A stretch of DNA of 64,000 bases from Haliotis cracherodii (taxonomy: Eukaryota): positions 81,716,001-81,780,000 of the forward strand of contig NW_027266275.1 of NCBI RefSeq assembly GCF_022045235.1. The letters run 5' to 3'. The notes under the pieces are model-generated. The model did not search any database. It worked only from the letters and a program-made list of their open reading frames with translations, and was not told the DNA's origin. Below, piece by piece: positions 1 through 51,708 of this stretch (position 1 is its first letter; each line of letters opens with the position of its first letter). The position numbers and the translations under genes are program-made.

Positions 1-1486
1 CTGCAATGGTCATACAAATATACACAGACAGCTGCTTGGCCAGGTCGTGGTAGCTGTCAACAGCAGATGTACAAGTCTTGGCCTGCAATGGTCATACAAA
101 TATACACAGACAGCTGCTTGGCCAGGTCGTGGTAGCTGTCAACAGCAGATGTACAAGTCTTGGCCTGCAATGGTCATACAAATATACACAGACAGCTGCT
201 TGGCCAGGTCGTGGTAGCTGTCAACAGTGGATGTACAAGTCTGGTCATACAAATATACACAGACAGCTGCTTGGCCAGGTCGTGGTAGCTGTCAACAGCA
301 GATGTACAAGTCTGGTCATACAAATATACAAAGATAGCTGCTTGGCCAGGTCGTGGTAGCTGTCAACAGCAGATGTACAAGTCTGGTCATACAAATATAC
401 ACAGACAGCTGCATGGCCAGGTCGTGGTAGCTGCCAACAGCAGATGTACAAGTCTGGTCATACAAATATACACAGACAGCTGCTTGGCCAGGTCGTGGTA
501 GCTGTCAAAAGCAGATGTTCAAGTCTGGTCATACAAATATACAGAGACAGCTGCTTGGCCAGGTCATGGTAGCTGTCAACAGTGGATGTACAAGTCTGGT
601 CATACAAATATACACAGACAGCTGCTTGGCCAGGTCGTGGTAGCTGTCAACAGCAGATGTACAAGTCTGGTCATACAAATATACACAGACAGCTGCTTGG
701 CCAGGTCATGGTAGCTGTCAACAGTGGATGTACAAGTCTGGTCATACAAATATACACAGACAGCTGCTTGGCCAGGTCATGGTAGCTGTCAACAGTGGAT
801 GTACAAGTCTGGTCATACAAATATACACAGACAGCTGCTTGGCCAGGTCGTGGTAGCTGTCAACAGCAGATGTACAAGTCTGGTCATACAAATATACACA
901 GACAGCTGCTTGGCCAGGTCATGGTAGCTGTAAACAGTGGATGTACAAGTCTGGTCATACAAATATACACAGACAGCTGCTTGGCCAGGTTGTGGTAGCT
1001 GTCAACAGTGGATGTACAAGTCTGGTCATACAAATATACACAGACAGCTGCTTGGCCAGGTCATGGTAGCTGTAAACAGTGGATGTACAAGTCTGGTCAT
1101 ACAAATATACACAGACAGCTGCTTGGCCAGGTCATGGTAGCTGTAAACAGTGGATATACAAGTCTGGTCATACAAATATACATAGACAGCTGCTTGGCCA
1201 GGTCATGGTAGCTGTCAACAGCAGATGTACAAGTCTGGTCATACAAATATACACAGACAGCTGCTTGGCCAGGTCATGGTAGCTGTCAACAGTGGATGTA
1301 CAAGTCTGGTCATACAAATATACACAGACAGCTGCATGGCCAGGTCGTGGTAGCTGTCAACAGCAGATGTACAAGTCTGGTCATACAAATATACACAGAC
1401 AGCTGCTTGGCCAGGTCGTGGTAGCTGTCAACAGCAGATGTACAAGTCTGGTCATACAAATATACATAGACAGCTGCTTGGCCAGA
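1..1486 (-). repeat. Minisatellite (71-bp unit; 82-bp units at left) derived from the NPRL3 exon-5 acceptor and first codons
   Basis: About 20 copies. Minus strand reads ttgcag|GCCAAGACTTGTACATCTGCTGTTGACAGCTACCACGACCTGGCCAAGCAGCTG = AKTCTSAVDSYHDLAKQL, the expected NPRL3 continuation after VVFALN. Confidence 0.9.
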
Positions 1487-1707
1487 TGTTTGGGGCTACA
1501 ATTGTCATACAAATTTACAGACAAGGACAGTTTGTCCCACCAATCCAATTGCAGCATTTACTGACTGGCAGCGGACACCAAGGAGGACAGTTTTAAGGAA
1601 GGACTCGGCTGGGGAAGTTTGGCACGCCTAGAACGTTGGATGTCCATTATGTTATTATGAATGAGAAATGAAAGTATTTTGAAAGTATGGTTACAATTCT
1701 GACTTAC

Positions 1708-1891
1708 ATTAAGTGCAAACACGACATTGACGGTGATGATCATGTGACCAGCTGACGATGGCTTGCTATCCACATGGTACATCTTCATCGGAAAGCCGAT
1801 GAAGCGAATTTCATCGATCTTCACATTGAACTTCTTTTTGCAGAGGGAAGATTTCACAGCTAACAAATTTGCCAGAATCTTGTCTGAAAAC
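1708..1891 (-). CDS. NPRL3: NPRL3 coding exon 4
   Basis: ctaag| FSDKILANLLAVKSSLCKKKFNVKIDEIRFIGFP...NVVFALN |gtaagt. Confidence 0.88.
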
Positions 1892-4800
1892 CTTAGAAGA
1901 GAGAATATTAGTAAGAGTGATTAAGGTTGTAATGCTGCTTTGAACAGTATTTCAGGGTTAGATCACTGCGGGTCATGTGATGTGAGGAAACACCAAACTG
2001 ATGTTGGACATAGAAGGAGACGGGTATGGTGCTGATATACAATGATATACCTAGAAACATAATCAGAGTCATCTTAACCCTCGATCACAGGTTTCTGGCA
2101 TGCCCAAGGGAAGTAACTCTGCATACCAAACTGTGGCACCTTAGGCCTGTTACACGACTGGGCCACCATGTAAAAGATGTTGATACTTTGTGATGTCATC
2201 AATTATCAAGAAGGTACCTTGTGCATGATAACTCGTATATGATTTGCCAGATTCACTATGGATACTTATTTCATCAAACAAATATGTCAACAGCAACTGT
2301 AACATTTTCAGGGCATTGTACAGTCAGCGGCAACAAAAACAAAGTCAAATATGTATTTTCCCTTGTGTTATGATGCACTTACTTGTCCGAAATATTAATC
2401 TTTTTTTCTTTATGTTCTTATTTCCCCAACAAATAAGTATATAGTCAACAGATACGTTTTAACATTCACATGTGCCTCAGATTGTCACATACAATTTTCA
2501 GTACATTATAAACATCACCATAATGTCACATCATGCACACATTTCACCATACCAACAGAACCCTAGAGTTATAGTTTGTGCATTGATGTAGTGGTTGTAC
2601 AGACATTATGTTTTCCCTATCATATTGAGCACTGTACACGTGTGTTTGTGAATGTCAGCTACTTACCAGTCCAAGTTTGCGTTCCTGCCTGAAGGGATCA
2701 CAGTACTCCTGTAACACAGCATCAGAATTAATCCTGTTAAGGATTCCACGTGACCCATGAACCAGTTAGGAACATAGAGTTTAATGCTGGTGCAATGTTA
2801 GTATCCTTCCGTTAAGCCATGACCAAGTGCTATTGTAAGGAAGATAAAATAGACCAGGCTACCAACCTGGCTATCCATGTGTTGACTGTACTAATATTCC
2901 GGGGGGGGCGGAAATACACCATTCAACCATCTTCCGGGGCACCATTGTGAAATGAGGTCTTTGTGCATTTTTTGGTCCGGACAAACAATAGCATATGGGT
3001 TTATGAAACAACAGTATGTTGGTAAACAAAAAATAAACCCTTATTGGCACTGCCTTGACGGAGCGCTGCTGAGCAAAACCAAGAATGCTCAACAGTACGT
3101 GTGTCAAGCTGATAGTGCCCAAGAAAGGTATTGAAGTGGCGCCACATAGCAGCCGAGCAGACTTCTTTGATGAGCAACGATGCAGCAAAGCCTTAAAAGG
3201 TCGCCATCCCTCTAACAGAATGGCCTTCTAAACCAGCTGGAATGGCCACGCCCTTCGCCATGTGAAACAGCATCAGATTTATTCATGTTAATGATTCGCC
3301 ATGCATGGAAGAATCAATGTGAAACTGTCACTAACTATTTGTCCCCCTTAAATTAATTATTGGCTCAGATCATCTTCCCGAGGCAAGGGAGTTAACTGAT
3401 TATAAAAGTCCAGTTTCCACACTTGCTGAACTAGGCTGGAATTATATTTTGGCTGGATGAATGAGTCTATGCATCATCCAATCAAAATCACTTAACGAAA
3501 GTGACATCCACTTTGTGACTGCTGTGCAGATTTCTGCTGATTGCAGGATTTGCAAAGCTAAGATTTGGGTGCCACGTTTACAGTCTGAACTTTTACAGTC
3601 AATTAAGTCCCTTGCCTCGGGAAGATGGGCTCAGATATCCACAGGACAAGTAGAGTTTACTCAAATTTGCAAGATCTTTTTCATATACTTTATCTATTCT
3701 TTCAAATGATTATGAGCTTAGAGATTACATTTGGAATAGCTGACACTCTAAAATTGTCAATGACATATAAAAGTGAAAAGAAACCTGACAAGCAAATTCC
3801 CAATTATACGCTTTTGAAATCCCTTTAGTGCCCATTGAATCAAGCTGGGGATGAAGAGATAATGTTGTACCTGGACATCAGGGCAATGGTACCTTAAAAA
3901 CCAGGAGGGATTGTATCATAAGTAATTTAAAGGACTTTATCCTGTTGCACTAAGGTCAGCTAATACATATACATGTGCACTCACTTGCTCCGATGATGAT
4001 CCTCAGCAACTTTGGATCGTGTAGCATAAGGATTTCGACCATACACTGAAAGATAATCATGTTCTACGTATAACCTGTAAGAAGGAAATATACACACTGT
4101 GAAAGTTAAAACAAATGTACATTTGTGTCTTGGAAAATGATTACCAATTCAGGTTACACTGTTGTAAATATTACATAAAATATGATGAGTACCGTATTTG
4201 CCATAATAAGCACACAGGAAACTTCGAAAATTGACAAATGGGGGTGCTTATTAAACCGGTTAAAACCTTAAACAAGCAAAATATAATTTTAGACTCTGAA
4301 CAGTAGTAAGCATACTTATTTCAAGCATTTATGAAACCAAAACATTTTCAATAATAGTTCATGATAGTTACTAGGCAATTATATCATTCCTACTTCTGTA
4401 AACAAAATCTGTAATATGCACAAGAAAATACTGACTAGCTGTCATGTAAATCTTCAATTATAGTCGTATAAATTTTCGATTATAGCACATGTTGGTATGC
4501 TAATAAATATTACTTACAAACTGGGTTCCTATAGGAGCAAAGCACTTAATACAGTGAATATGGTAATCATAAATAGGGTGTGGTATCCTATCCTGCACAA
4601 TGACTTGAACACCCTGTCATGCTTGTAGCAGCATACTATATAATTACTGCATTAACCAACCTGCGAAATACGCTACAGTCGGAAAGCACACGTTAAATCT
4701 TCTATATCAGTCAGTCAACCTGCTCCAAATGAAGTACATGGAATAGGTAATTTTTATTAAGCATCAACCCTTCAAAACTTTTGGTGCATCAAAGACACTA

Positions 4801-6056
4801 TAATTCTGGTATGAGGTATGTAGGCCCATAAAATATTAAATATCCACGTTATGGGTTTTCAGACTCTTAGAAAAATTCGCAGATGCAAAACATCTTACTC
4901 CACAGTTTGAAATAATTTTCAAACCCAACAAGACAGTCGGCCAGGTGACCCATAAATGTTGCCTGCCCATCGCCAAAGTTACCTGTCCGCATTCAGCTAT
5001 AATGAATATTAAAAAATTGCAATAAATAAGAGACAAGTGGCATCTTGAATCAGCTGAAAAAAGGCAAACAATTGCAAAAAAATCTACGAGGAGTAATGAT
5101 ATAACTGACTATGTAAGTCTTAAAATTACAGATGGAGGAAAATGTCATGCAGCCTGACTATAAAGTTACCAGGCATGGGCAGGAAGGCTGGCAGTTATTT
5201 TGGACACTTGTCTCGCTCACTTGTAAAAGACAACATTATCTTAAAAAATAAGCCATCATCTGAGCATTTACGATGTCTGTGTGACGCCATACCCCTCGTT
5301 AAAGCGACGAACATGGCCGTCCAAAAACAATTAGTGTCCAAAAACATGATCCGATGAAAGTGTACCCAGCCTCAAATAATAGTAAACATTATTTTCACCT
5401 TGCAAAAAAGTACTATCACAAGTGATATTTTTGGCCAAAATGATTTTTGAAGTTTGAACAAATAATAACCCACATGATGTTCTTTATCTGGCATTTTGTA
5501 AACAGAAATAAACATGATAAACGTGGACATCTTGGAAAGTTATACTTATATTCATGGATCATCACACTGTTTTAAATATTGTTGTACGATGAAATTCTGT
5601 ACATCAATAAATCAATAGCCAAACAGTAGTTTAGTTCAACATCGAATATAATATTACAAATACCTACAAAGTTCGCCAGCCGTTCAATAGAGGTGTAACT
5701 GCATCAGTAGAACTGATTTGGCCTATTTTGTTTCGGAAAAGCATCAATAACAAATGTTAATATTTTGCTACATCTTCAGAAAATAGACATTTCATTTACA
5801 ACTCAATTAGTTTACTCCGAAATAACAATTCCTTCAAATGTTATTTAGCCAAATCTTTTGAGAGCTGAGGCATAATATGTATGATCATAACACAGAAGCA
5901 ATTGTGATCGAAAAGTGGACGAAGAGGATCGCTGAGCCCACCTCTTGACACGGTGTACCGGTTGTCTTCGGATTCGTAAGGGTAACGGAATAATAAACGA
6001 TCCCCTCGGGTTCCCGATGTCACAACAAAAATACCGAGTGGGTCCATGTCTTCCAT
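1708..6056 (-). CDS. NPRL3: GATOR1 complex subunit NPRL3, 5' part (exons 6056-5942, 4045-3985, 2708-2667, 1891-1708; continues left of window)
   Basis: Spliced translation is MEDMDPLGIFVVTSGTRGDRLLFRYPY...GRNPYA...LDWFSDKILANLLAVKSSLCKKKFNVKIDEIRFIGFP...NVVFALN. It matches recalled NPRL3 longin-domain motifs (SGSRGxxLLFRYP; FSDxILAxxLAxKSxxCxxKFxxKIDxxRFxGxP). All junctions are GT-AG and phase-consistent. Confidence 0.92.
2667..2708 (-). CDS. NPRL3: NPRL3 coding exon 3
   Basis: ttacag| STVIPSGRNANLD |gtaagt; phase 2->2. Confidence 0.75.
3985..4045 (-). CDS. NPRL3: NPRL3 coding exon 2
   Basis: tttcag| (V)YGRNPYATRSKVAEDHHRS |gtgagt; phase 1->2. Confidence 0.8.
5942..6056 (-). CDS. NPRL3: NPRL3 coding exon 1
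   Basis: ATG at 6056; MEDMDPLGIFVVTSGTRGDRLLFRYPYESEDNRYTVSR; donor G|gtgggc. Confidence 0.9.
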
Positions 6057-6482: not shown

Positions 6483-6738
6483 ATGGCCACTCAATTACCC
6501 TATATAACGCAGGGTCACCGGAAACACGACGTCCATTGGATGGTGATATCTCCAGGCCACAGTGGTGTTTTGTGTGTAGCTTGTTTGGTGGAGCAGGTGG
6601 AGAATGATGAAGCCCCACTTGTACAGAGGAAAGTCGTCCTGTCGTTGTTGGCCAGTCTCCTTGGAGACAGTAAAGAAGTAGCAGCCAAGTTTGAAGAAAA
6701 CCTGTTACTTTGTAGACACATGATTGACATTGTGACAG
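6483..6738 (+). CDS. MEI1: MEI1 coding exon 1
   Basis: caccATGG Kozak; MATQLPYITQGHRKHDVHW...LCVACLVEQVENDEAPLVQRK...DIVT; donor G|gtagcc. Confidence 0.88.
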
Positions 6739-9700: not shown

Positions 9701-12700
9701 TTTAATGACTTGACAAATATGTAAGTATTTGAACCGTATTTATCTTGTAAATAAGCCATGTGTTAACAGAGGTCAGGTTAATAACTGGACTGCACATCTG
9801 TTAATATTAAGGGGTCATACGATACATGATGGACATGCACATCCAGTTGAGCTCAGGTCCAAAACGATTTGTAGGATATGTTGGGTGTACCTGTTTATCT
9901 ATTGCCAGTGGTGCAAGTTAAGCATGACGCCCAAGGACCCTTGTCATAACCCTAATGTTTAAAGTTAAAATTTAGGGGTCCCTAGACAGAGAAAGTTTAG
10001 CAGAAAGCCTCAAGGTACCCCGTTAATTTTGAACACTGAGAAGGAGAGATGTCTGTTGATGTTTAACTGCTATGATATGTCGGTAGTTACAAGACAGCCA
10101 GGACCTGGTGTCTGTCTCACCATACTTGCTGCTGCTTGGGAGGCTGCTGGTTATTTCTCCGGCATATGGATTTCACCTTCTCCACAAACACGGTAAACTT
10201 CTCAATCAGTGTCACACTTATTGCACTAACAAACACGGTAAACTTCTCAATCAGTGTCACTTATTGCACTAACGACTTATATTTGCATAAAACCCTGTTG
10301 TAAATAGTTCCAATCCAAGCTCTATATTTGTCATATTTCAAGAACTTTAGTTGTGAATGATGTTATCAAAGGCCATTGGTGATAGAAAGAATTTTACTAC
10401 TGTGTATGGGTTTTGTTTCAGAATCTCTTCTTCTCCTCGTACTAAGGTTACTGAGTCAAACGTCAGATGAAAGCTGTTTGTGTTCTGTAATCTACATCTT
10501 CATCCATCTGTTGGATGACTCTCTGCAATCAGACGTGTCCCTTGATGTGAGGTGTTGTGTCAATCAGGTGCTGGTGTCTCTCCTCACTTGTGCTGAATCT
10601 CTGGACCTGAGAGTCAATCTACTGGGTGAGTTAGGTCCACAATCAGGTATGTCCCTTGATGTGAGGTGTAGTGTCAATCAGGTGCTGGTGTCTCTCCTCA
10701 CTTGTGCTAAATCTCTGGACCTGAGAGTCAATCTACTGGGTGAGTTAGGCCCACAGTTGCTAATGTATCGCTATAATATCTTGTAATTATGCACAACTGA
10801 AAATGCAACAAAATTAACATCTATAGAAAAGACTGTTAAAGGCTTCTATAGGACTAATAGAAATAACGAAATGTTTTGAAAAATATTAATATATATCATT
10901 CAGGATCTTTGGTAGCCGCCTCAATGAGTTTCACAATCTCTGCTTCAGCGCTTCTCAAAAACATCCTGAAGCACACAGATGAAAACACTGTGAAGCTGTT
11001 GATGGCACCCAACCCAGACAACAAGTATTTGGTGATGGGACTCAAGAAGATGTTGATCACCAAGCAGGAGGTGCTGCAGACGGCCTCTGCTCACTGCGTG
11101 ACGGTGCTGATGTCCTGCTCCAAGGATGAAAGTACCGTCACTCAGATCCTGGAGAGTGACCTAGCCGGTGAGTGAGTGAGTTACTGATGCTCTAGAGATG
11201 AAAGTACTGTCACTCAGATCCTGGAGAGTGACCTAGCCAGTGAGTGACGCTCTACAGATGAAGGTACCGTCACTCAGATCCTGGAGAGTGACCTAGCTGG
11301 TGAGTGAGTGAGTGAGTGACGCTCTACAGATGAAGGTACCGTCACTCAGATCCTGGAGAGTGACCTAGCTGGTGAGTGAGTGTGTGAGTGATGCTCTAGA
11401 GATGAAAGTACAGTCACTCAGATCCTGGAGAGTGACCTGGCCCGTGAGTGAGTGAGTGAGTGAGTGAGTGAGTGAATGATGCTCTAGAGATGAAAGTACT
11501 GTCACTCAGATCCTGGAGAGTGACTTAGCTGGTGAGTGAGTGAGTGAGTGAGTGATGCTCTAGAGATGAAAGTACTGTCACTCAGATCCTGGAGAGTGAC
11601 CTAGCTGGTGAGTGAGTGAGTGAGTGATGCTCTAGAGATGAAAGTACAGTCACTCAGATCCTGGAGAGTGACCTAGCTGGTGAGTGAGTGAGTGAGTGAT
11701 GCTCTAGGGATGAAAGTACAGTCACTCATATCCTGGAGAGTGACCTAGCTGGTGTGTGAGTTAGTGAGTGAGTGATGCTCTAGAGATGAAAGTACAGTAA
11801 CTCAGAACCTGGAGAGTGACCTAGCCGGTGAGTGAGTGAGTGATTCTCTAGAGATGAAAGTACAGTCACTCAGATCCTGGAGAGTGACCTAGCTGGTGAG
11901 TGAGTGAGTGAGTGAGTGATGCTCTAGAGATGAAAGTACCGTCACTCAGATCCTGGAGAGTGACCTGGCCCGTGAGTGAGTGAGTGAGTGAGTGAGTGAT
12001 GCTCTAGAGATGAAAGTACTGTCACTCAGATCCTGGAGAGTGACCTAGCTGATGAGTGAGTTAGTGAGTGAGTGAGTGATGCTCTAGAGATGAAAGTACA
12101 GTAACTCAGATCCTGGAGAGTGACCTAGCCGGTGAGTGAGTGAGTGATGCTCTAGAGATGAAAGTACAGTCACTCAGATCCTGGAGAGTGACCTAGCTGG
12201 TGAGTGAGTGAGTGAGTGATGCTCTACAGATGAAAGTACCGTCACTCAGATCCTGGAGAGTGACTTGGCCCGAGAGTGAGTGAGTGAGTGAGTGATGCTC
12301 TAGAGATGAAAGTACTGTCACTCAGATCCTGGAGAGTGACCTAGCTGGTGAGTGAGTGAGTGAGTGAGTGATGCTCTACAGATGAAAGTACCGTCACTCA
12401 GATCCTGGAGAGTGACTTGGCCCGAGAGTGAGTGAGTGAGTGAGTGATGCTCTAGAGATGAAAGTACTGTCACTCAGATCCTGGAGAGTGACTTAGCTGG
12501 TGAGTGAGTGAGTGAGTGAGTGAGTGATGCTCTAGAGATGAAAGTACTGTCACTCAGATCCTGGAGAGTGACCTAGCTGGTGAGTGAGTGAGTGAGTGAT
12601 GCTCTAGGGATGAAAGTACTGTCACTCAGATCCTGGAGAGTGACCTAGCTGGTGAGTGAGTGACGCTCTACAGATGAAAGTACTGTCACTCAGATCCTGG

Positions 12701-15700
12701 AGAGTGACCTAGCTGGTGAGTGAGTGAGTGAGTGAGTGATAGATGCTCTAGAGATAAAGGTACTGTCACTCATATCCTGGAGAGTGATCTAGCTGGTGAG
12801 TGAGTGAGTGATGCTCTAGAGATGAAAGTACTGTCACTCAGATCCTGGAGAGTGACCTAGCTGGTGAGTGAGTAAGTGATGCTCTAGAGATGAAAGTACT
12901 GTCACTCAGATCCTGGAGAGTGACCTAGCTGGTGAGTGATGCTCTAGAGATGAAAGTACAGTCACTCAGATCCTGGAGAGTGACCTAGCCGGTGAGTGAG
13001 TGAGTGAGTGAGTGATAGATGCTCTAGAGATAAAGGTACTGTCACTCATATCCTGGAGAGTGATCTAGCTGGTGAGTGAGTGAGTGATGCTCTAGAGATG
13101 AAGGTACTGTCACTCAGATCCTGGAGAGTGACCTAGCTGGTGAGTGAGTGAGTGATGCTCTAGAGATGAAAGTACAGTCACTCAGATCCTGGAGAGTGAC
13201 TTAGCTGGTGAGTGAGTGAGTGATGCTCTAAAGATGAAAGTACTGTCACTCAGATACTGGAGAGTGACCTAGCTGGTGAGTGAGTGAGTGAGTGAGTGAT
13301 GCTCTAGGGATGAAATTACCGTCACTCAGATCCTGGAGAGTGACCTGGCCCGTGAGTGAGTGAGTGAGTGAGTGATGCTCTAGAGATGAAAGTACTGTCA
13401 CTCAGATCCTGGAGAGTGACTTAGCTGGTGAGTGAGTGAGTGATGCTCTAGAGATGAAAGTACTGTCACTCAGATCCTGGAGAGTGACCTAGCTGGTGAG
13501 TGAGTGAGTGAGTGAGTGATGCTCTAGAGATGAAAGTACAGTCACTCAGATCCTGGAGAGTGACCTAGCTGGTGAGTGAGTGAGTGAGTGATGCTCTAGG
13601 GATGAAAGTACTGTCACTCAGATCCTGGAGAGTGACCTAGCTGGTGAGTGAGTGACGCTCTACAGATGAAAGTACTGTCACTCAGATCCTGGAGAGTGAC
13701 CTAGCTGGTGAGTGAGTGAGTGAGTGAGTGATAGATGCTCTAGAGATAAAGGTACTGTCACTCATATCCTGGAGAGTGATCTAGCTGGTGAGTGAGTGAG
13801 TGATGCTCTAGAGATGAAGGTACTGTCACTCAGATCCTGGAGAGTGACCTAGCTGGTGAGTGAGTGAGTGATGCTCTAGAGATGAAAGTACTGTCACTCA
13901 GATCCTGGAGAGTGACCTAGCTGGTGAGTGATGCTCTAGAGATGAAAGTACAGTCACTCAGATCCTGGAGAGTGACCTAGCCGGTGAGTGAGTGAGTGAG
14001 TGATGCTCTAGAGATGAAAGTACTGTCACTCAGATCCTGGAGAGTGACCTGACCAGTGAGTGAGTGAGTGAGTGATGCTCTAGAGATGAAAGTCCAGTCA
14101 CTCAGATCCTGGAGAGTGACCTAGCTGGTGAGTGAGTTAGTGAGTGAGTGAGTGATGCTCTAGAGATGAAAGTACAGTCACTCAGATCCTGGAGAGTGAC
14201 CTAGCCGGTGAGTGAGTTAGTGAGTGAGTGATCGATGCTCTAGAGATGAAAGTACTGTCACTCAGATCCTGGAGAGTGACCTGACCAGTGAGTGAGTGAG
14301 TGAGTGATGCTCTAGAGATGAAAGTCCAGTCACTCAGATCCTGGAGAGTGACCTAGCTGGTGAGTGAGTTAGTGAGTGAGTGAGTGATGCTCTAGAGATG
14401 AAAGTACAGTCACTCAGATCCTGGAGAGTGACCTAGCTGGTGAGTGAGTTAGTGAGTGAGTGATGCTCTAGAGATGAAGGTACTGTCACTCATATCCTGG
14501 AGAGTGATCTAGCTGGTGAGTGAGTGAGTGATGCTCTATAGATGAAGGTACTGTCACTCAGATCCTGGAGAGTGACCTAGCTGATGAGTGAGTGAGTGAG
14601 TGATCGATGCTCTAGAGATAAAGGTACTGTAACTCATATCCTGGAGAGTGATCTAGCTGGTGAGTGAGTGAGTGATGCTCTATAGATGAAGGTACTGTCA
14701 CTCAGATCCTGGAGAGTGACCTAGCTGGTGAGTGAGTGAGTGAGTGATGCTCTAGAGATGAAAGTACAGTCACTCAGATCCTGGAGAGTGACCTAGCCGG
14801 TGAGTGAGTGAGTGATGCTCTAGAGATGACAGTACTGTCACTCAGATCCTGGAGAGTGACCTGGCCAGTGAGTGAGTGAGTGAGTGATGCTCTAGAGATG
14901 AAAGTACAGTCACTCATATCCTGGAGAGTGACCTAGCTGGTGAGTGAGTTAGTGAGTGAGTGAGTGATGCTCTAGAGATGAAAGTACAGTAACTCAGATC
15001 CTGGAGAGTGACCTGACCAGTGAGTGAGTGAGTGAGTGATGCTCTAGAGATGAAAGTACTGTCACTCAGATCCTGGAGAGTGACCTAGCTGGTGAGTGAG
15101 TGAGTGAGTGAGTGATGCTCTAGGGATGAAATTACCGTCACTCAGATCCTGGAGAGTGACCTGGCCCGTGAGTGAGTGAGTGAGTGAGTGATGCTCTAGA
15201 GATGAAAGTACTGTCACTCAGATCCTGGAGAGTGACTTAGCTGGTGAGTGAGTGAGTGATGCTCTAGAGATGAAAGTACTGTCACTCAGATCCTGGAGAG
15301 TGACCTAGCTGGTGAGTGAGTGAGTGAGTGAGTGATGCTCTAGAGATGAAAGTACAGTCACTCAGATCCTGGAGAGTGACCTAGCTGGTGAGTGAGTGAG
15401 TGAGTGATGCTCTAGGGATGAAAGTACTGTCACTCAGATCCTGGAGAGTGACCTAGCTGGTGTGTGAGTGAGTGACGCTCTACAGATGAAAGTACCATCA
15501 CTCAGATCCTGGAGAGTGACCTAGCTGGTGAGTGAGTGAGTGAGTGAGTGATAGATGCTCTAGAGATAAAGGTACTGTCACTCATATCCTGGAGAGTGAT
15601 CTAGCTGGTGAGTGAGTGAGTGATGCTCTAGAGATGAAGGTACTGTCACTCAGATCCTGGAGAGTGACCTAGCTGGTGAGTGAGTGAGTGATGCTCTAGA

Positions 15701-18700
15701 GATGAAAGTACTGTCACTCAGATCCTGGAGAGTGACCTAGCTGGTGAGTGATGCTCTAGAGATGAAAGTACAGTCACTCAGATCCTGGAGAGTGACCTAG
15801 CCGGTGAGTGAGTGAGTGAGTGATGCTCTAGAGATGAAGGTACTGTCACTCAGATCCTGGAGAGTGACCTGACCAGTGAGTGAGTGAGTGAGTGATGCTC
15901 TAGAGATGAAAGTCCAGTCACTCAGATCCTGGAGAGTGACCTAGCTGGTGAGTGAGTTAGTGAGTGAGTGAGTGATGCTCTAGAGATGAAAGTACAGTCA
16001 CTCAGATCCTGGAGAGTGACCTAGCCGGTGAGTGAGTTAGTGAGTGAGTGAGTGATGCTCTAGAGATGAAAGTACTGTCACTCAGATCCTGGAGAGTGAC
16101 CTGACCAGTGAGTGAGTGAGTGAGTGATGCTCTAGAGATGAAAGTCCAGTCACTCAGATCCTGGAGAGTGACCTAGCTGGTGAGTGAGTTAGTGAGTGAG
16201 TGATGCTCTAGAGATGAAAGTACAGTCACTCAGATCCTGGAGAGTGATCTAGCTGGTGAGTGAGTTAGTGAGTGAGTGATGCTCTAGAGATGAAAGTACC
16301 ATCACTCAGAACCTGGAGAGTGACCTAGCCGGTGAGTGAGTGATCGATGCTCTAGAGATGAAGGTACTGTCACTCAGATCCTGGAGAGTGACCTAGCTGG
16401 TGAGTGAGTGAGTGAGTGAGTGATGCTCTAGAGATGAAAGTACAGTAACTCAGATCCTGGAGAGTGACCTAGCTGGTGAGTGAGTGAGTGAGTGATGCTC
16501 TAGAGATGAAAGTACAGTAACTCAGATCCTGGAGAGTGACCTAGCTGGTGAGTGAGTTAGTGAGTGAGTGATGCTCTAGAGATGAAAGTACAGTCACTCA
16601 GATCCTGGAGAGTGACCTAGCTGGTGAGTGAGTTAGTGAGTGAGTGATGCTCTAGAGATGAAAGTACCATCACTCAGAACCTGGAGAGTGACCTAGCCGG
16701 TAAGTGAGTGATCGATGCTCTAGAGATGAAGGTACTGTCACTCAGATCCTGGAGAGTGACCTAGCTGGTGAGTGAGTGAGTGAGTGATGCTCTAGAGATG
16801 AAAGTACAGTAACTCAGATCCTGGAGAGTGACCTAGCCGGTGAGTGAGTGAGGTAGAACACAGTATCTCAGGAACAGGAAGTGCATCCAAATGTGATACC
16901 ATGTGGCATATTGTCACTGCAATCTCCTTCCTCCTTCAAGACACAAGAGGTCAAGCCACGGGGTGGGATTGTTTAGTGTGACATCATAGACTCAGAATGC
17001 CAACCGCTAAAAAACACAAAATATGTGTAAGAATGGGCAGGGCCAAGTGTTCTAGGTTTAGGTGCATAATTTATTACTTTGATTTATTTGATTAAAAATG
17101 ATGCAAGTTTTGAATAAATTCATATTTTTGAACTTATCCCTCCACATCAGTAGGACCTTATAGATAAGGGGAATACTCTGATTCCCCCTGGTTGAATGGT
17201 ATTATGTATAGAAAAGTGCTCAACTTGTTGCCTTTTTAAAAACCCTTTATTAAATGTAGAAGGAAAGTCCAAAGTGGCATGACTTAGTTGTAGACATTTG
17301 CCACTTTGATCACACCAACGGTTGTAGCCATAACCTGAGAATGATGGTGATGTACATGAACCCGATCCTGCTGCTGTTGCTGTTGTTTCTGTTGCTGGTG
17401 AGGTGTTCCCATAGATTACAGTGTGGGTAACAGTATAACAAAATTTCTTAGTTTTTTAGTTTTGAAGACACATGAGTCATATTTGTTATTTCTTTCTGTT
17501 GTATTTTGGGAAGCCTTTGATGATATAAGGCATAGATGTGTAGGAGTCATGCACCGTATTGTGATGTATGGAATTTTTCTTTTCAGAATTTCTCTTTGAG
17601 TCTTTGCATTCACAAAGTGGTCCTCAACTGGAGTAAGAATCATTCAGAATGGTTTCCCTTTTTTATCATTATTTGTGGGTTTTGTTTGTTCTATTTGTAA
17701 ACATGGTGAAGCGTTTGTGTTGACATCTTACTAATAGTTCAATGCTCTCGTCCTGGCCATATTTCTATGATATGTATATTCCTAGGTTTCATTTATATTT
17801 TCAGATTTAATGTTTATTTATAGTTCAGTTGTTAGCAGTCTTTGAATTCTTTACATTTGAGCCAACATCAGAAAACTTAATCATACTGCAGTGATAGAAA
17901 CTAACAGTTTTAGTCCACTAGTCCAAATAATGATAAAAATCCTTAAAAAGGGCAAATTCTGCTAGTCCTTATGATACTGTAACTATTGGGCAGATTGGCA
18001 GGGACTAAGGGACTAGTGCCAATTTCTAACTCTGTACTACATACACATTGCTTTACAGTGTTCCCTCGCTATTGCGCTCTTCAATATAGCACTAACTCGG
18101 TTATAGCGCACTATAAAGCATGGCTCCCAAAAGTTACTTGCATTTTAAATAAACTCATGTTTTCCAATGACACGATGTTTTCCCCATCTCAAAAACATTA
18201 TCAGCTTTTCTTTTGTTGGTCATATACCCCCTACAACTCCATCTCAGTTAAACCTCCGATCATCGATTATTTGGACCCCAAAGGTAGCGTTGTAGTGAGG
18301 GATCACTGTATCTGGTAGTTATCTCCAACTTTCCCCCTGTTGGGGCCCAGGTTCTAACAGGTCACCAGCACTCTAATTCCTGAAGTAAGAGGGGACTTTA
18401 TTGGACTGGGTGGTTGCACACGCTGACTTCCGTGATTGATCCGGGGAGGAGGGGGGGCTTCAGCAACCCATGCTTGTCGTAAGAGGCGACTAACGGGATC
18501 GGGTGGTCAGGCTCACCGACTTCCATGATTTCTTGTTGTCATACCCAAACAGCTTGGGAGAGTGCTCATAACATCCACGACTGGTTTGTCTGGCCTTGAC
18601 TACAGGTCACCAGGATATACATGGAATATGGCTGAATGTGCTTTTAAGCAACACTGACCAACTCACTCACTCTTATATTCAACATGTCCTTAACAATTAA

Positions 18701-24168: not shown

Positions 24169-24228
<60 letters not shown>

Positions 24229-30200: not shown

Positions 30201-33200
30201 CCAGTCTCTGCTGCAGTGTTTCCTGGCCAACAGCCGAGATCTGTCCGGATTACCTCCCCTTGTTATCAGATGTCTTGCTTTCCTTGTGGCGGTGAGTATA
30301 AGGCTAAAAACAATAATACATGTAGTCTTGGTTCTCAGGCACTGCCCTTATCATCATAAAGTTTCCAGCACATTTCATGTTTATTTACATTTAGAAAAAA
30401 GCAAAAAAAATCCTTAAAAATTCCAAGTTCAATGGTAGCCAAATACTGTATTCCAGTATTTTATTCATCAAGAAATACATTTATGTAGGGAGGCCCTTTT
30501 CTTGGTTGATTGTATACAATTGTTTTTTTTGGTTACACAACTGTATATTTGGTTACATAGTAGTTTGAACAACACCCCAAAAACAAATAAAAAAGGCACC
30601 GCCTGCCCGCACAATATTTTCAAAAACCATTGCTTAAGAACCAATTCTTTTATGTTTTAAAGCCTAATGTTTGTATTTTTAGGAACTTTACAATGGGAAT
30701 GCCAAATGCTATATGTAGTATAGGACATTAGGGATGTATGTCTTGAGAACCTTGAGAAGATATATGAAATTATAGATTTGGAGAATATTTGGTGCAGAGC
30801 TTGGAAGCTAAGACCCCCCCCCCCCCCCCCCTCCCCTTTTAAGAGAGACAAGACTCAATTGGACGCCTTTACAAGAAGGTTTCAATTCATTCATCACTGA
30901 ATTGACTGGCTCAGACTTGTGTATTTACCTTGGGATGAAAAAAAAATCAGGGTCTTTGGTGTTCTTATATTTATCATTATTCATACCTGTTGGAATTCTT
31001 CCTGGTAGTCTTAACTTCTCACATGATGTACGAAGCACAAGCAGATCTGTCTGTCTGCATTAATCTTAACTTCTCACATGATGTACAAAAGTACAAGCAG
31101 ATCTGTCTGTCTGCATTAGACATGAGCATGTTAATACACGTAGTACTGGTTTAAAATGTTTGTTTGATCGTCAGTGTTCATCAGGAGATACAGTGGCCAA
31201 TACCCATCAGTCCTTCCAGTATCACACAGGTATGCAGGACACAGTGGTTATCTAATGAGTATTGTCTATTGGTGGGGTGTGTGTTCTGCAACAGGATCTT
31301 AATAGTAATGCTGTGATGATGACGTCGCTCTGTTGTTGTTGCAGTTGATTCTGGACTAGGAATTCACTGACCGTTCCGAACGTGCATTTTATGAAAAACC
31401 GACGCAACTATAGATCTTTATGCAGAATTATAGGGAATTTTTTTATTTGTAAATGGTTTTGTTGGAGAAATCACTCGAATCAGTGGATTCAGGAGGAAGA
31501 AGGCATCTTACTCATGGGATGATTCTGTCACTCTTTTGTCCTTAGTATGACACATTAGTATGACACATTAGTATGTCACATTAGTATGACACATTAGTAT
31601 GGTACATTGGTAATACACATTAGTACGACACATTAGTATGACACATTAGTATGACAAATAAGTATGTCACATTAGTATGACATGTTAGTATGACACATTA
31701 GTATTTCACATTAGTATGGTACATTGGTAATACACATTAGTATGACACATTAGTATGTCACATTAGTATGACCATTAGTATGTCACATTAGTATGTCACA
31801 TTAGTATGACCATTAGTATGTCACATTAGTATGACACATTAGTATGTCACATTAGTATGACACATTAGTGACACATTAGTATGTCACATTAGTGACACAT
31901 TAGTATCTCACATTGGTACGACACATTGGCAAGACACATAAGTACGACACATTAGTATGTCACATTAGTATGTCACATTGGTATGCCACATTAGTATGAC
32001 AGATAAGTATGGTACATTGGTATGACACATTAGTGTGACACATTAGTATGTGACATTAGTATGGCACATTAGTATGACACATTTGTGACACATTAGTATG
32101 ACACATTAGTGACACATTAGTATGACTCCATATCACTTGCCTTTTGGTAATCTACATGATTCTAGCCGTAAGAATATATGGTCTTGTTATATGATTCTGT
32201 TTTAATTATATTTAAACATTTAGGAATGTTACCATATGGTATGAATGTATTTGTTAAAAAAAAATATTTCAATAAAGTCATAAATATAAAAAATGATTTT
32301 TGCTGTACAGTGATGCCATATTTATTTTGCTTTCCGGTTTGGGAAATCTGACTGACCTCCTGGAGAGTTGCCCTGTAGCAGTGTGGTACACCCACCACCC
32401 TGTCGTCATGTGCTGGGTTTTCAGTGAGGAGAGTCGGGCACAGCAACTGGGCCACACNNNNNNNNNNNNNNNNNNNNNNNNNNNNNNNNNNNNNNNNNNN
32501 NNNNNNNNNNNNNNNNNNNNNNNNNNNNNNNNNNNNNNNNNNNNNNNNNNNNNNNNNNNNNNNNNNNNNNNNNNNNNNNNNNNNNNNNNNNNNNNNNNNN
32601 NNNNNNNNNNNNNNNNNNNATCCTACAGACAAAAGTAGGGGAACTGATGAAATGATAGTGAAGGTGTAATAGCGATAAATGGGGCGTGTAGATCAATATC
32701 ACCTTGACGGCATACTGTTGATTAACCTGCGTATGGTTGTCCCTCTTATTGCCCACTGTTCTGCATGGAGAGCTGCCCCAAGTTGGGCCACGTCGGTGGG
32801 TGCTGGGCCTCTGGTGTACACTCCCACAAGGAACATCCCACAGATGCCCCAATAGGAACATGTCAGGGTACTGAGCATGCCAGTCCCAAGTCCGTACACC
32901 TGTGATTGTTGATGTTGTAAACCTTCTGTGACGTCATCATAATGTTCTCCTTTGGGGTTAAATCTCATAAACAGGGATGTTGTAATATCCCTGTGATTTT
33001 ATATGATATTCCAGGCAAATTTGCTATATAATGTGTTATAATAACCAGGGGATTTTATTAACACAACTTCCGTTTAGACTGTAACATGTAAATGTTTCTC
33101 ACTAGAAAGTTATATTGCGTTTGAACACAATGTAATGAAAAAAAATAAAAAATATTTGTTTTGGTTATTTTCCCAGGATCGAACACACAACCTTCGAATA

Positions 33201-42200: not shown

Positions 42201-45200
42201 TTTTTCCTTGTGGATCCAATTTGCTTACTATAGACTCTAGCGACGTCTATCTGAGGAGTGGAGAATGAGAAGTCAACATTATATTATACACAGTAAAAAA
42301 ATACATAGTGTCCCTTCAGAGAATTCAGGTAAACAAACAGCTGATAACTAACTTGGTCAATAAAAATGTGAAATTTCAGAAGAATTATCACCAGACATGA
42401 TGATTTACAATTTATATTGTATTTTCTGTTCTGCTAGGCATTATTTTATATGCAGAAATAAAGATTACTGCATGTATTTTCTCGTAAACTAAGCCAGAAA
42501 TAGTAATCAGCTGTATGCACATTTTCTACCAATCTACAGGTGATTCAGTTAAAAATATACCCAAAAATACAACTTCAAAGAATTTTGATGCAATGATCTG
42601 ATGAATTGTATCTGAAACTATTATTTTATCAGAAACAACATATTCCAGTATTTAGTTGCAGCTTTACTACCGGGTATATATATTTAGAAAAATGATAACC
42701 ATAAGCACAGCATTATGGAACAAATGTTTGCTATTGCCAGATATGTTTACGTATGAACAATTTTATCAGTCACCATTGAAGCCTCCCGCATTCTTGCTAC
42801 AACAAATGAATGAAAACAAAATGTGAATATTGTAATTACAATTGACGAAGGTTATGTGTATAATATCAGGCAGTTACCTTGTTAGAGGAATGTATCCGTC
42901 AATATCCACACAAAGGACCAATATTCCTTACATCTGAGGCTGTACAATGAAACTTGTTCGAAGTCACAGGTCTATGTAACAATCTAACATTTTAAAGTAT
43001 ATATAGTGTTTCCAGATATTATAACCCGTGTTCTTCTCTCAACTGATCATGCAAGTTTGTTTCAGGTGTTTCACATTGTGTCATGTCTCATTGGTCAGCT
43101 GGGATAGCACACGTGATAACTATATTCATGGATGTCCATGGTTCTTTAAAATTACAGTGAGCAATCAATCAAAGTATTATGAGCACTGGCTAATCCTTTC
43201 AACAAAGTGTGCTGTTTTCACGTAGGCACTTCAAGCCCAGATATGGGTGTATTCTGTGTGCTTTAGTAAACCTACATATATAAACAATTACTCTTGGCAA
43301 ATCTACTGTGCAAGGAGGCACGGGTGGCCCAGTCGTCTAAGGCGCCGCGATTCGCTGTGCAGAGTTGCGTCTTTTGGGCACGCCCAAAACCTATGATTGT
43401 GGGTTCGAATCCCGGTTTGCCCCGATTATGTTTCTAGGTTTGTCAGCACCATACCCATGCGAGTGGGTTTCACCGAAGTGGTAAACGTCTGAGACCTGCA
43501 TCACTTGGGGCTTTCCTCTCACATTAAGCTGACACGCCGTGACATAACTGGAATACTGTTAAAAGCGGCGTTAAACCCAACTCACTCACTGTGCAAGATC
43601 AATCAACCTATTATCGATCAATGTTATTTGCTGCTCAACTGACCATTTCTCTCTTTCTGCAATGCCAAGTGCATATTACATGACATGTAATACATTCACC
43701 ACATCAGATCTGGACTTATATCCCAGTCTTAGATTAATACCCCAGACACCAGAAATGCCAAATGCGAACCACTGATTGCGATATATAAGATTCTTATCAA
43801 ATTACTTGAACATAACTTAAAAATACAAAATAACAAGGTAACTGACTCACAAATGCTGATTGACTTGTGGTCTGATCATTTTTAGTTGGTCCTATCCTTG
43901 TCCAAAACAAAGGCTTCATGGTGAAACTGGAGAGAATTTTGTCAGGCAGTTGCCATACAGAGGTGGACTCAGTCATGAGATTGGTTTCCTGGCTAGCAGC
44001 TACAGCAAGGCCAGAAGGTGAGGTAAGTCTAGCCAGAGGTGGACAAATAACACTAGACATAGGTGAACAGTAACAAGACTAGACAGAGGTGGACAGAGTG
44101 ATCAGACTAGCCAGAGGTGGACAGATAACACTAGACAAAGGTGGACAGAGTGACCAGACTAGCCAGAGGTGGACAAATAACACTAGACAGAGGTGGACAG
44201 AGTGACCAGACTAGCCAGAGGTGGACAGATAACACTAGACAGAGGTGGACAGAGTGACCAGACTAGCCAGAGGTGGACAGATAACACTAGCCAGAGGTGG
44301 ACAGAGTGACCAGACTAGCCAGAGGTGGACAGAGTGAACAGACTAGCCAGAGGTGGACAGATAACACTAGACAGAGGTGGACAGGGTGACCACACTAGCC
44401 AGAAACGGACAGAGTGACTACACTAGCCAGAAGTTGAATGAGTGACCAGACTAGACAGAGGTGGACAGAGTGACCAGACCAGCCAGAGGTGGACAGAGAT
44501 GAGGTATAAGGTAGACTATTTGAATTAAATTAATCTGCATTGCTTTTCCTGTAGGTTCCCTACCAAATCCATGTGAGCCACATCTTCTTGCTGGATGTTG
44601 TCACAACAGGCGATGGAGCCACCCCTGCTGGAGGCCTCAGTCTGCTGTCTGCAGCCCTGTCTGTTCCCCCCAGCACACAGGGGCCTGTCGTGTTCAGTAG
44701 AGACAGACTTATACAGGACACTCCTCTGTTCACTGCCAGGGACGTCAGGACTCTCTACTTCCATCTCCAGCAGCTGGTGTGTCAGGTTGGTTCATAAAGA
44801 CATTTATCTTACCTCCTTGTCAGAATGTTGAATTCTGATTGGTTCACGTAATCTTGATAAAATACTATGTATCCTTCCTGGGAGGGAAATATATTTCTGA
44901 GTGGGAGAATAAATTGCTTATACTCACCACGAAGAAAACAGGCTGCATGTAAATTTCTGAGTGGGTAATTAATCCCTTACACCCCGCTACGAAGCAAAAA
45001 CCTGCACGTTGTTTACGAGTCAATGAAACAGCACAAGTTAACCTCAGTTCAATCAAACAGCTATTTTCTATCAATTTTTGGTTTGTTTTAATTCTTTTAC
45101 AATAGAAGACTGAAACATGTTGGCAAGATAAAGACGTTGTAGCTTCAGCTTGTGGTATAAAACCTAACACAGGATGCAAAGGACCAAATATACCCCTCGT

Positions 45201-49522: not shown

Positions 49523-49822
49523 TGGGCGTCGTCAGGGAAAGACTGACCCACAGAAGTAATAGAAAGAGACACTTGGCCTTACTTCTAGCATTGCTGAATG
49601 CAGGGTAGAAGACTATGAAGCCTCACATCAGTAGTGTTTGTCATCAGGAAACACCGACCCACAAAACAACAAATATTAAAAGACACTTGTACTCCCAGCA
49701 CTACTGAATCCAGGGTAGGAGACTATAAAGGAACAACAGTGTGGACGTCATCAGTGTGAATGGAGTTAACTATGATCATGCACAACGGAAGCAATCCCAT
49801 TTGCTTTGTGTGGGTCTCGTAG

Positions 49823-50156
49823 GTCACCTCGGCCAGCACTGGGGGAGATCCTACTGGAACTAGTTCACTGATGGGGCTTATCGTTACCGGTACATGGCAT
49901 GTACAGGATGATTCTTACTTCCTCTTTTCTCTGAATCAAAGTATATACTATCTGTTAAGCATACAATAAGCTATTTTAAAGATTTCCAGGTTTCTGTGTA
50001 TTTAGCATAATAAACAGTGTGGATACCAGGTGTCACACATTGTGCAGGAATTACTATGAGCTATGGTTTGCAGGTGTGGTGAGTCAGAACAGTTTAAACC
50101 ATTTCCTAATGCAGGATGATGTTGAATGTGCCACTGTGGCGGTTACTGATGGATGA
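49823..50156 (+). CDS. Possible alternative MEI1 terminal exons 49823-49889 and 50074-50156
   Basis: Phase-compatible with a donor at 49489: VTSASTGGDPTGTSSLMGLIVT|GVVSQNSLNHFLMQDDVECATVAVTDG*. No homology support. Confidence 0.3.
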
Positions 50157-51708
50157 TGTTGAATATGCACTGTGGTTATTACTGATGGATGATGTTGAAT
50201 GTGCACTATGGCTGTTACTGTCGGATGATGATGAATGTGCACTGTGGCTGTTACTGATGGATGATGTTGAATGTGCACTGTGACTGTTGCTGATGGATGA
50301 TGTTGAATGTGCACTGTGGCTGTTACTGATGGATGATGTTGAATGTGCACTGTGGCTGTTACTGATGGATGATGTTGAATGTGCACTATGGCTGTTACTG
50401 ATGGATGATGTTGAATGTGCACCGTGGCTGTTACTGATGGATGATGTTGAATGTGCACTATGGCTGTTACTGATGGATGATGTTGAATGTGCACTGTGGC
50501 TGTTACTGATGGATGATGTTGAATATGCACTGTGGCTGTTACTGATGGATGATGTTGAATATGCACTGTGGCTGTTACTGATGGATGATGTTGAATATGC
50601 ACTGTGGCTGTTACTGATGGATGATGTTGAATGTGCACTGTGGCTGTTACTGATGGATGATGTTGAATATGCACTGTGGCTGTTACTGATGGATGATGTT
50701 GAATGTTCACTATGGCTGTTACTGATGGATGATGTTGAATATGCACTGTGGCTGTTACTGATGGATGATGTTGAATATGCACTGTGGATGTTACTGATGG
50801 ATGATGTTGAATATGCACTGTGGTTGTTACTGATGGATGATGTTGAATGTTCACTATGGCTGTTACTGATGGATGATGTTGAATATGCACTGTGGCTGTT
50901 ACTGATGGATGATGTTAAATATGCACTGTGGATGTTACTGATGGATGATGTTGAATATGCACTGTGGTTGTTACTGATGGATGATGTTGAATATGCACTG
51001 TGGTTGTTACTGATGGATGATGTTGAATATGCACTGTGGCTGTTACTGATGGATGATGTTGAATGTGCACTATGGCTGTTACTGACGGATGATGTTGAAT
51101 GTGCACTGTGGCTGTTACTGATGGATGATGTTGAATATGCACTGTGGTTGTTACTGATAGATGATGTTGAATATGCACTGTGGCTGTTACTGATGGATGA
51201 TGTTGAATGTTCACTGTGGCTGTTACTGATGGATGATGTTGAATGTGCACTATGGCTTTTACTGATGGATGATGTTGAATGTGCACTGTGGCTGTCACTG
51301 ATGGATGATGTTGAATGTTCACTATGGCTGTTACTGATGGATGATGTTGAATGTGCACTGTGGCTGTGACTGATGGATGATGTTGAATGTGCACTGTGGC
51401 TGTTACTGATGGATGATGTTGAATATGCACTGTGGCTGTTGCTGATGGATGATGTTGAATGTGCACTGTGGCTGTAACTGATGGATGATGTTGAATGTGC
51501 ACTGTGGCTGTTGCTGATGGATGATGTTGAATGTGCACTGTGGCTGTAACTGATGGATGATGTTGAATGTGCACTGTGGCTGTTGCTGATGGATGATGTT
51601 GAATGTGCACTGTGGCTGTAACTGATGGATGATGTTGAATGTGCACTGTGGCTGTTACTGATGGATGATGTTGAATGTGCACTATGGCTGTTACTGACGG
51701 ATGATATT
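50114..51708. repeat. 36-bp minisatellite (GATGATGTTGAATGTGCACTGTGGCTGTTACTGATG)n, ~44 copies
   Basis: Direct inspection; explains the long repetitive ORFs on both strands. Confidence 0.97.

What the first reader, a model, noticed from the sequence alone, without database searches (positions are those of the whole stretch)
1..51708. Recurrent tandem repeats seeded at exon-intron junctions that amplify splice sites in two neighbouring genes
Seen: at least five independent repeats have a unit that straddles a splice junction. They are the NPRL3 exon-5 acceptor (1-1486, ~20x), the MEI1 exon-4 donor (2x45 nt), exon-5 donor (2x114 nt), exon-6 donor (~80x) and exon-11 acceptor (3x95/96 nt). Weaker cases lie at exon 25, exon 30 and the putative terminal exon. 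Junctions are a tiny fraction of the window, and in every case the array grows outward into the intron and leaves one intact exon copy. Established: tandem duplication across splice or proto-splice sites is a recognised route to new introns and exons. Inference: this lineage may have a junction-targeted duplication process (e.g. transcription- or spliceosome-linked breaks), or strong selection shaping where minisatellites survive. It also needs some way to cope with hundreds of decoy splice sites.
Basis: partly seen in the sequence, partly recalled or inferred. Interest (0 to 1): 0.88.

Follow-up and report, generated by a model that had tools for sequence, protein, structure and literature searches.

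The report
Splice-junction minisatellites in abalone genes
Five tandem repeats in two neighbouring black abalone genes really are copies of the genes' own exon-intron junctions, but this repeat type is already known and, in an independent sample of this genome, occurs about as often as random placement predicts.

Summary
The window is Haliotis cracherodii (black abalone), with NPRL3 on the minus strand head to head with MEI1 on the plus strand. All five main claims hold. Each repeat unit contains a real exon end plus its splice site:
- NPRL3 acceptor: 20 extra copies.
- MEI1 donor: 2x45.
- MEI1 donor: 2x114.
- MEI1 donor: 78 extra copies over 5.7 kb.
- MEI1 acceptor: 3x95.

The weaker cases (exon 25, exon 30, terminal exon) are not established.

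This is a known kind of repeat: the 'mirage' minisatellites of amphioxus and the human F7 intron-7 VNTR. This scan has already reported it on other DNA of this genome.

The geometry of "array in the intron, one intact exon copy" follows automatically from any tandem duplication that spans a junction.

The window has 5 such arrays against about 1 expected (nominal P about 0.0015), but it was picked for this feature. In an independent sample of 150 conserved exons from this genome I found 4-5 junction-spanning arrays against 3.4 expected (ratio 1.2-1.5, 95% CI 0.3-3.5). No arrays lay inside exons, against about 10 expected.

The best reading is ordinary minisatellite birth at random positions, purged from exons and tolerated at junctions. 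A junction-targeted process is not supported, though an excess up to about threefold is not excluded. No RNA evidence could be obtained.

The parts
1..1486 (-). NPRL3 acceptor array: 20 decoy copies of intron end + CAG + first 31 nt of the next exon. The authentic copy lies just left of the window.
1711..1899 (-). NPRL3 exon upstream of the array-bearing intron (donor at about 1710)
   Evidence: Pfam NPR3, 30.6 bits against a cut-off of 27.5; translation
10087..10192 (+).
   Evidence: tblastn with P0001; sequence
10184..10273 (+). 2x45 duplication: last 9 nt of the exon + GTAAAC donor + 36 nt of intron
10422..10625 (+). The RefSeq model uses the first copy and the first donor.
10536..10755 (+). 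2x114 duplication: last 90 nt of the exon + GTGAGT + 24 nt of intron. The 7-nt motif CAATCAG lies just before both copies.
10949..11167 (+).
11125..16852 (+). Donor array: the authentic junction plus 78 copies. Unit lengths are 60-88 nt in steps of 4, because of the (GTGA)n run. It contains a 1,820-bp higher-order duplication.
22485..22779 (+). 3x95/96 acceptor triplication. The last copy is the authentic one.
22722..22910 (+).
   Evidence: tblastn with P0002; sequence
44029..44498 (+). 28/52-nt array that starts 12 nt after the donor of the exon ending at 44017. The unit only resembles the donor region (weak case).
50114..51709 (+). 36-nt x44 array. Its relation to any MEI1 exon was not established.
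32458..32619 (.). Assembly gap. It abuts the open end of a MEI1 exon, lies in no array, and was left unfilled.

Best explanation
These are 'mirage'-type minisatellites: ordinary tandem duplications that happen to span an exon-intron junction.

1. Birth (inferred). Segments of 30-250 bp are duplicated by replication slippage or short-homology events at essentially random positions in genes. In this genome about 1.2-1.4% of intronic positions lie in the founding unit of some array.

2. Filter (shown statistically). Duplications inside exons are removed by selection. Those that span a junction persist at about the neutral rate.

3. Geometry (follows logically). The copy still joined to the rest of the exon remains the working splice site, so every other copy is intronic by definition.

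4. Growth (shown). Unequal exchange expands and reshuffles the arrays. The evidence is a 1,820-bp block duplicated inside the 5.7-kb array, interleaved unit subtypes in the NPRL3 array, and microsatellite length variation inside units.

5. Splicing (inferred from gene models and published precedent; not tested here). The first donor or the last acceptor is used. For donors the upstream-most of identical sites wins. For acceptors only the last copy is followed by a complete exon with a real donor.
For: All five units contain a mapped exon end plus its splice site.

Independent sample: 64 loci around dynein, myosin and kinesin exons from other parts of the genome, giving 150 exons, 300 edges, 45 arrays and 126.5 kb of non-exonic sequence.
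- 4 clear junction-spanning arrays were found: L060 (83 nt x19+), L044 (83 nt x7), L019 (230 nt x2) and L021 (31 nt x2.7). L018 is a fifth, weak case.
- 3.4 were expected under uniform seeding.
- No array lies inside an exon, against about 10 expected.

The number of arrays per kb is the same in the window and in the sample, 0.29 per kb.

The junction position within the unit is spread evenly.

There is higher-order structure and unit-length variation in steps of 4 nt.

The RefSeq H. cracherodii and H. rubra proteins contain each duplicated segment once, and the RefSeq model uses copy 1 of the 2x114 duplication.

Published precedents: amphioxus mirages splice normally and are length-unstable (PMC3087553); the human F7 intron-7 VNTR uses the upstream-most donor (PMC1557585).
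Against: - The window itself holds 5 such arrays against about 1 expected (nominal P 0.0015), and MEI1 alone has 4.
- In the sample, arrays that begin within 7 nt of a splice site without including it look over-represented (3-4 against 0.75 expected), but I chose that threshold after seeing the data.
- Two paralogous dynein genes carry independent duplications at the homologous donor.
- The sample is small, so an excess up to about 3.5-fold is not excluded.
- At least one background array abuts an interspersed-repeat copy and another lies about 200 nt from one. If many background arrays arrive with mobile elements, the expected number is overstated.
- No RNA data were available, so splice-site use is inferred only.
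Confidence: 0.7

Rival explanations
1. A mutational process aimed at junctions (breaks linked to transcription or the spliceosome, or splice-site sequences acting as slippage seeds) makes tandem duplications arise preferentially at exon-intron boundaries in abalone.
For: - The window has an excess, 5 against about 1 expected.
- Arrays that abut a junction look over-represented in the sample.
- Two paralogous dynein genes have independent duplications at the homologous donor.
- The GTGAGT donor is itself a proto-(GTGA)n, and a (GTGA)n run sits in the 5.7-kb array and at the unit boundary of L044.
- One earlier follow-up of this scan judged the recurrence too frequent for chance.
Against: - In the independent sample the ratio is 1.2-1.5 with a CI that includes 1.
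- The junction lies at arbitrary positions inside the units.
- The window was selected for this feature. About 0.8 such windows are expected among the 526 read.
- Another earlier follow-up found a rate close to chance.
Confidence: 0.15
2. The arrays are kept because they do something. Possibilities are in-frame 42-nt micro-exon cassettes that lengthen MEI1, or decoy splice sites or U1-binding sites that tune expression of a meiotic gene.
For: - The exon-derived part of the large array is 42 nt between an AG and a GT and has no stop codon.
- The 2x114 duplication is in frame.
Against: - The would-be micro-exon acceptors sit behind a purine-rich (GTGA)n run. The pyrimidine fraction is about 0.3, against 0.65-0.75 at authentic MEI1 acceptors.
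- Unit lengths vary in steps of 4 nt, not 3.
- The cassette in the acceptor triplication is 55 nt, so it shifts the frame. If instead the first acceptor is used without a cassette donor, the read-through runs straight into a stop.
- The gene models of two species contain a single copy.
- The same structures occur in unrelated housekeeping and motor genes.
Confidence: 0.05
3. The arrays, or their sizes, are assembly artefacts.
For:
- Copy numbers of long arrays can be misjudged by assemblers.
Against: - The assembly comes from 15-20 kb PacBio HiFi reads at 37x (PMC9709981). These reads are longer than every array here.
- The copies differ by point changes and by microsatellite length in an ordered pattern.
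- The same structures recur at many loci.
Confidence: 0.03

Closest known systems
'Mirage' minisatellites of amphioxus (Adh3, Canestro et al. 2002; globin genes BflGb6 and BflGb9, PMC3087553)
   Same: - Minisatellite-like tandem duplications whose unit spans an exon-intron boundary.
- Both 5' and 3' boundaries are affected.
- Units range from 10 to about 160 bp.
- Most copies keep the AG/GT signals.
- One edge copy is the authentic junction.
- Turnover is array-like.
   Different: - The host is a gastropod mollusc, not a cephalochordate.
- Copy numbers are far higher (79 copies, 5.7 kb, against 3-6 in the globin genes).
- Normal splicing and length instability were shown experimentally in amphioxus and could not be tested here.
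Human F7 intron-7 37-bp VNTR (PMC1557585)
   Same: The first repeat element spans the exon-intron boundary, so the authentic donor is followed by identical pseudo-donors that stay silent. This is a direct model for the three MEI1 donor arrays.
   Different: - It has a handful of copies in one human gene.
- The mechanism of donor choice was shown with minigenes in mammalian cells and has not been shown in molluscs.
- It says nothing about acceptor arrays.
Intron gain by internal tandem duplication across AG|GT proto-splice sites (Rogers' model; Zhuo et al. 2007 and Gao and Lynch 2009, as cited in PMC3087553)
   Same: Tandem duplication creates extra, potentially usable splice sites inside a gene.
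   Different: That model duplicates exonic sequence and creates a new intron between the copies. Here an existing intron is only lengthened, and no new intron or exon is evident in the gene models.

Membership tests
Mirage minisatellite | Head-to-tail tandem repeat of minisatellite unit size inside a gene | tested here: met
   Tandem Repeats Finder: units of 45-114 nt, 2 to 79 copies, 85-98% matches
Mirage minisatellite | The unit contains an exon end plus the adjoining intron end, including the splice signal | tested here: met
   Exon ends were fixed by homologous proteins and by Pfam. The exon share of the unit is 9, 90, 43, 57 and 31 nt.
Mirage minisatellite | One edge copy is the authentic junction, continuous with the rest of the exon | tested here: met
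   It is the first copy for the three donor arrays and the last copy for the two acceptor arrays.
Mirage minisatellite | Regular splicing of the host mRNA is maintained | not testable with these tools
   There is only indirect support: the RefSeq and H. rubra models contain each segment once.
Mirage minisatellite | Length instability or polymorphism between alleles | not testable with these tools
   No second haplotype or reads could be reached. The higher-order duplication and the unit subtypes show past unequal exchange.
F7-type donor VNTR | The authentic donor is followed by identical or near-identical pseudo-donors in the repeat | tested here: met
   About 60 of the 78 copies keep G|GTGAGT. 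The 2x45 and 2x114 copies keep their donors.
F7-type donor VNTR | The upstream-most donor is the one used | not testable with these tools
   This is inferred from the gene models only.
Intron gain by tandem duplication (Rogers' model) | A new intron is created between duplicated exonic AG|GT sites | tested here: not met
   All arrays lie in introns whose flanking exons join as in the Gigantopelta and H. rubra proteins. No extra exon or intron appears.

The most novel reading that the evidence does not exclude
Abalone genes carry a real but modest (about 2-3 fold) excess of tandem-repeat births at or right next to splice sites. One possible cause is that splice-site sequences are themselves slippage-prone: GTGAGT can act as a seed of (GTGA)n, and polypyrimidine and TG-rich acceptor regions are low in complexity. 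Another is breakage linked to co-transcriptional splicing. Such an excess would make junction repeats a steady source of new splice sites in this lineage.
Probability: 0.2. Interest if true: 0.6.

Novelty: new member of a known kind. Interest (0 to 1): 0.3.

Why it matters
The window shows that large numbers of perfect decoy splice sites can sit next to a working site without visible damage to the gene models: 78 donors in one intron and 20 acceptors in another.

In this minisatellite-rich mollusc roughly 1-2% of the exon edges sampled carry such arrays, at about the rate expected for neutral events. Abalone is therefore a convenient natural system for studying splice-site choice among identical competitors, and for studying the raw material of intron and exon gain.

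It does not call for a new mutational mechanism.

The arrays also coincide with a gene-model problem. The RefSeq MEI1 model stops at 302 aa, just past the 5.7-kb array. I did not test whether the array is the cause.

Tried and rejected
I then stopped, so read laying was never used.

Wider genome sample. Three further family searches (Pkinase, p450, COesterase) therefore gave coordinates but no DNA. The cadherin search hit mostly giant single exons and was of no use for sampling junctions.

Protein searches. The search for homologous proteins with the C-terminal half of the Gigantopelta MEI1 returned only the query itself.

Exon finding in the sample. A first all-against-all ORF comparison to find flanking exons was swamped by interspersed repeats. 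I replaced it with a version filtered by strand and family.

Candidates rejected as junction-spanning after reading the sequence:
- The L015 array starts at intron position +7.
- The L030 array ends 4 nt before the AG.
- L025 abuts the acceptor.

Micro-exon cassette reading of the 5.7-kb array. I rejected it as unlikely because the acceptors are poor.

Joined model. All protein searches used single exons by reference or database proteins.
Full report
WHERE THE WINDOW COMES FROM. The window is G000:C12:81716001-81780000 of a 1.18-Gb assembly. A phmmer search with one MEI1 exon found a 302-aa protein that is identical over the shared exons. It is named XP_071105446, 'meiosis inhibitor protein 1-like', from Haliotis cracherodii, and it lies on a contig of exactly the length of C12. 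The published assembly was built from 15-20 kb PacBio HiFi reads at 37x (PMC9709981).

THE GENES. NPRL3 lies on the minus strand. Its exon at 1711-1899 matches Pfam NPR3 above the cut-off, and its first coding exon is near 5950-6055. MEI1 starts at 6483 on the plus strand. I mapped its exons one at a time by tblastn, using the black abalone model, the H. rubra model (505 aa) and the Gigantopelta aegis protein (1170 aa).

THE OBSERVATION. All five main claims are correct.
- NPRL3 acceptor. Read on the minus strand, the 71-nt unit consists of about 40 nt of intron, a CAG acceptor and the first 31 nt of the next exon. There are 20 such copies in the window and all keep the AG. The 21st copy lies 29 nt left of the window and runs on into an exon that aligns with NPRL3.
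- MEI1 2x45. This duplication carries the last 9 nt of the exon ending at 10192, plus its donor.
- MEI1 2x114. This duplication carries the last 90 nt of the exon ending at 10625 plus GTGAGT.
- MEI1 donor array, 11125-16852. It has 79 copies, counting the authentic one, of the last 43 nt of the exon ending at 11167, a donor and a (GTGA)n run. About 60 copies keep G|GTGAGT. Unit lengths run from 60 to 88 nt in steps of 4.
- MEI1 acceptor triplication, 22485-22779. It carries 37 nt of intron, the acceptor and the first 57 nt of the exon that starts at 22722.

The weaker cases are not established. The array after the exon ending at 44017 begins 12 nt into the intron and only resembles the donor region. 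I found no exon evidence for the array at 50114-51709.

THE ASSEMBLY GAP. The gap at 32458-32619 lies in none of the arrays. A MEI1 exon reads open right up to the first N, so its donor cannot be placed and continuity across the gap is unknown. I left the gap as it is.

WHAT IS ALREADY KNOWN. Tandem repeats whose unit spans an exon-intron boundary were named 'mirages' in amphioxus. They were first described in Adh3 and later in the globin genes. They occur at both kinds of boundary, most copies keep the AG/GT signals, mRNA splicing is normal, and the arrays are unstable in length (PMC3087553). The human F7 gene has a 37-bp VNTR whose first element spans the exon 7 / intron 7 boundary. There the identical downstream donors are functional but silent, because the most upstream site is chosen (PMC1557585). 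Earlier notes of this scan list many more such arrays on other DNA of this genome. Four follow-ups had already filed them as mirages, and two of those disagreed on whether they exceed chance.

THE GEOMETRY IS AUTOMATIC. This follows from the definition. After a tandem duplication across a donor, the first copy is still joined to the exon, and everything after its GT is intron. After a duplication across an acceptor, the last copy is joined to the exon, and everything before it is intron. No polarity in the mutational process is needed.

IS IT MORE THAN CHANCE? The right target size is not the junction itself but the unit length. A founding duplication of u bp spans a given junction if it starts within u bp of it. 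In positions 1-52,000 the window has 15 arrays with a period of 10 or more. Their unit lengths sum to 713 nt, and there are about 70 junctions. That gives about 1 expected junction-spanning array against 5 observed, nominal P about 0.0015. The window was chosen for this feature, and about 0.8 such windows would be expected among the 526 already read in this genome.

INDEPENDENT SAMPLE. For an unselected sample I searched the whole genome with Pfam models of dynein AAA_6, the myosin head and the kinesin motor. I kept the 64 loci returned, each an exon match with 1.5 kb on either side. One contaminant-like contig was dropped. I found further exons in the flanks by similarity to paralogues of the same family, on the same strand, with no hits to other families. 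After removing overlaps the sample holds 150 exons (300 edges), 126.5 kb of non-exonic sequence and 45 arrays. The density of arrays, 0.29 per kb, is the same as in the window. The window differs only in having longer arrays, with 26% of its length covered against 6.7% in the sample.

I read each candidate by eye.
- Four arrays clearly span a junction:
  - a kinesin donor, 83 nt x19 or more, with 62 nt of exon in the unit (L060);
  - a myosin donor, 83 nt x7 (L044);
  - two dynein donors, 230 nt x2 (L019) and 31 nt x2.7 (L021).
- A fifth case is weak: L018, with 6 nt of exon plus the donor in a 125-nt partial duplication.
- Three others only abut the site (L015, L025, L030).

The expectation stratified by gene family is 3.4. 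The ratio is therefore 1.2-1.5, with a 95% interval of 0.3-3.5. No array lies wholly inside an exon, where about 10 would be expected at the intronic density. Across all eight clear or weak cases, the junction sits anywhere from 5% to 81% of the way along the unit, consistent with a uniform spread. A break at the splice site would not give that pattern.

HOW THE ARRAYS GROW. The 5.7-kb array contains a block that is repeated almost exactly 1,820 bp further on. The NPRL3 array interleaves two unit subtypes. Unit lengths in the MEI1 array vary through the internal (GTGA)n run. These are the usual marks of unequal exchange and slippage. The 2x114 duplication has the motif CAATCAG just before both copies, which fits short-homology slippage.

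SPLICING. I could obtain no RNA data. Indirect evidence is as follows.
- The RefSeq black abalone and H. rubra proteins contain each duplicated segment once.
- The black abalone model uses copy 1 and the first donor of the 2x114 duplication.
- The idea that the 5.7-kb array is a set of in-frame 42-nt micro-exons is unlikely. The would-be acceptors follow a purine-rich (GTGA)n run, with a pyrimidine fraction of about 0.3 against 0.65-0.75 at real MEI1 acceptors.
- The extra acceptor copies at 22485-22779 would give a 55-nt cassette, which shifts the frame. Without a cassette donor, the read-through from the first acceptor runs straight into a stop.

VERDICT. The thing is a known kind of repeat in a new host, and this scan has already seen it elsewhere in this genome. 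The best-supported mechanism is random minisatellite birth in a genome with a very high birth rate, removal from exons, and near-neutral survival at junctions.

CAVEATS.
- The independent sample is small.
- Exon edges in the sample come from similarity, not from annotation.
- At least one background array abuts an interspersed-repeat copy and another lies about 200 nt from one, which could inflate the expectation.
- An apparent excess of arrays that start within a few bases of a splice site (3-4 against 0.75) rests on a threshold I chose after seeing the data.
- A modest junction bias therefore remains possible.

Noticed in passing
G000:C74:4486-5433 and 24214-24885 (outside the window): A small contig carries kinesin and protein-kinase matches with many in-frame TAA and TAG codons (18 TAA + 2 TAG, and 8 TAA + 2 TAG). 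This looks like a contaminant from an organism that reads these codons as sense, such as a ciliate.
   Followed up: no
window 5950-6740: NPRL3 (minus strand) and MEI1 (plus strand) are head to head, with their start codons about 430 bp apart. This suggests a shared bidirectional promoter region.
   Followed up: no
window 6483-17633: The RefSeq MEI1-like model XP_071105446 is only 302 aa and ends just after the 5.7-kb array. The H. rubra model starts inside the exon that is partly duplicated here. Gene models of this locus appear fragmented.
   Followed up: partly
L019:844-1304 and L021:1104-1188: Two paralogous dynein genes on different contigs carry independent donor-spanning duplications (230 nt and 31 nt units) at the homologous junction after ...RLVITPLTDR.
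   Followed up: partly
window 38021-38128, 28228-28335, 23843-23934: These are copies of one interspersed repeat (77-84% alike). The 27-nt x60 array at 38141 starts right at the end of one copy, and the 38-nt x33 array at 28543 lies about 200 nt from another. Some arrays may therefore be linked to mobile elements.
   Followed up: partly
L004:1-5070 and 6349-7912 (NPRL3 introns left of the window): Two more large arrays (36 nt x141 and 60 nt x26) lie in the next NPRL3 introns. Neither contains an exon end.
   Followed up: yes
G000:C12:28406365-28415066: Six intronless protein-kinase ORFs of about 288 aa lie in tandem, about 1.59 kb apart.
   Followed up: no
window 1915-2170: A short interspersed repeat just upstream of the NPRL3 exon has dozens of 68-82% identical copies across the genome.
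   Followed up: no
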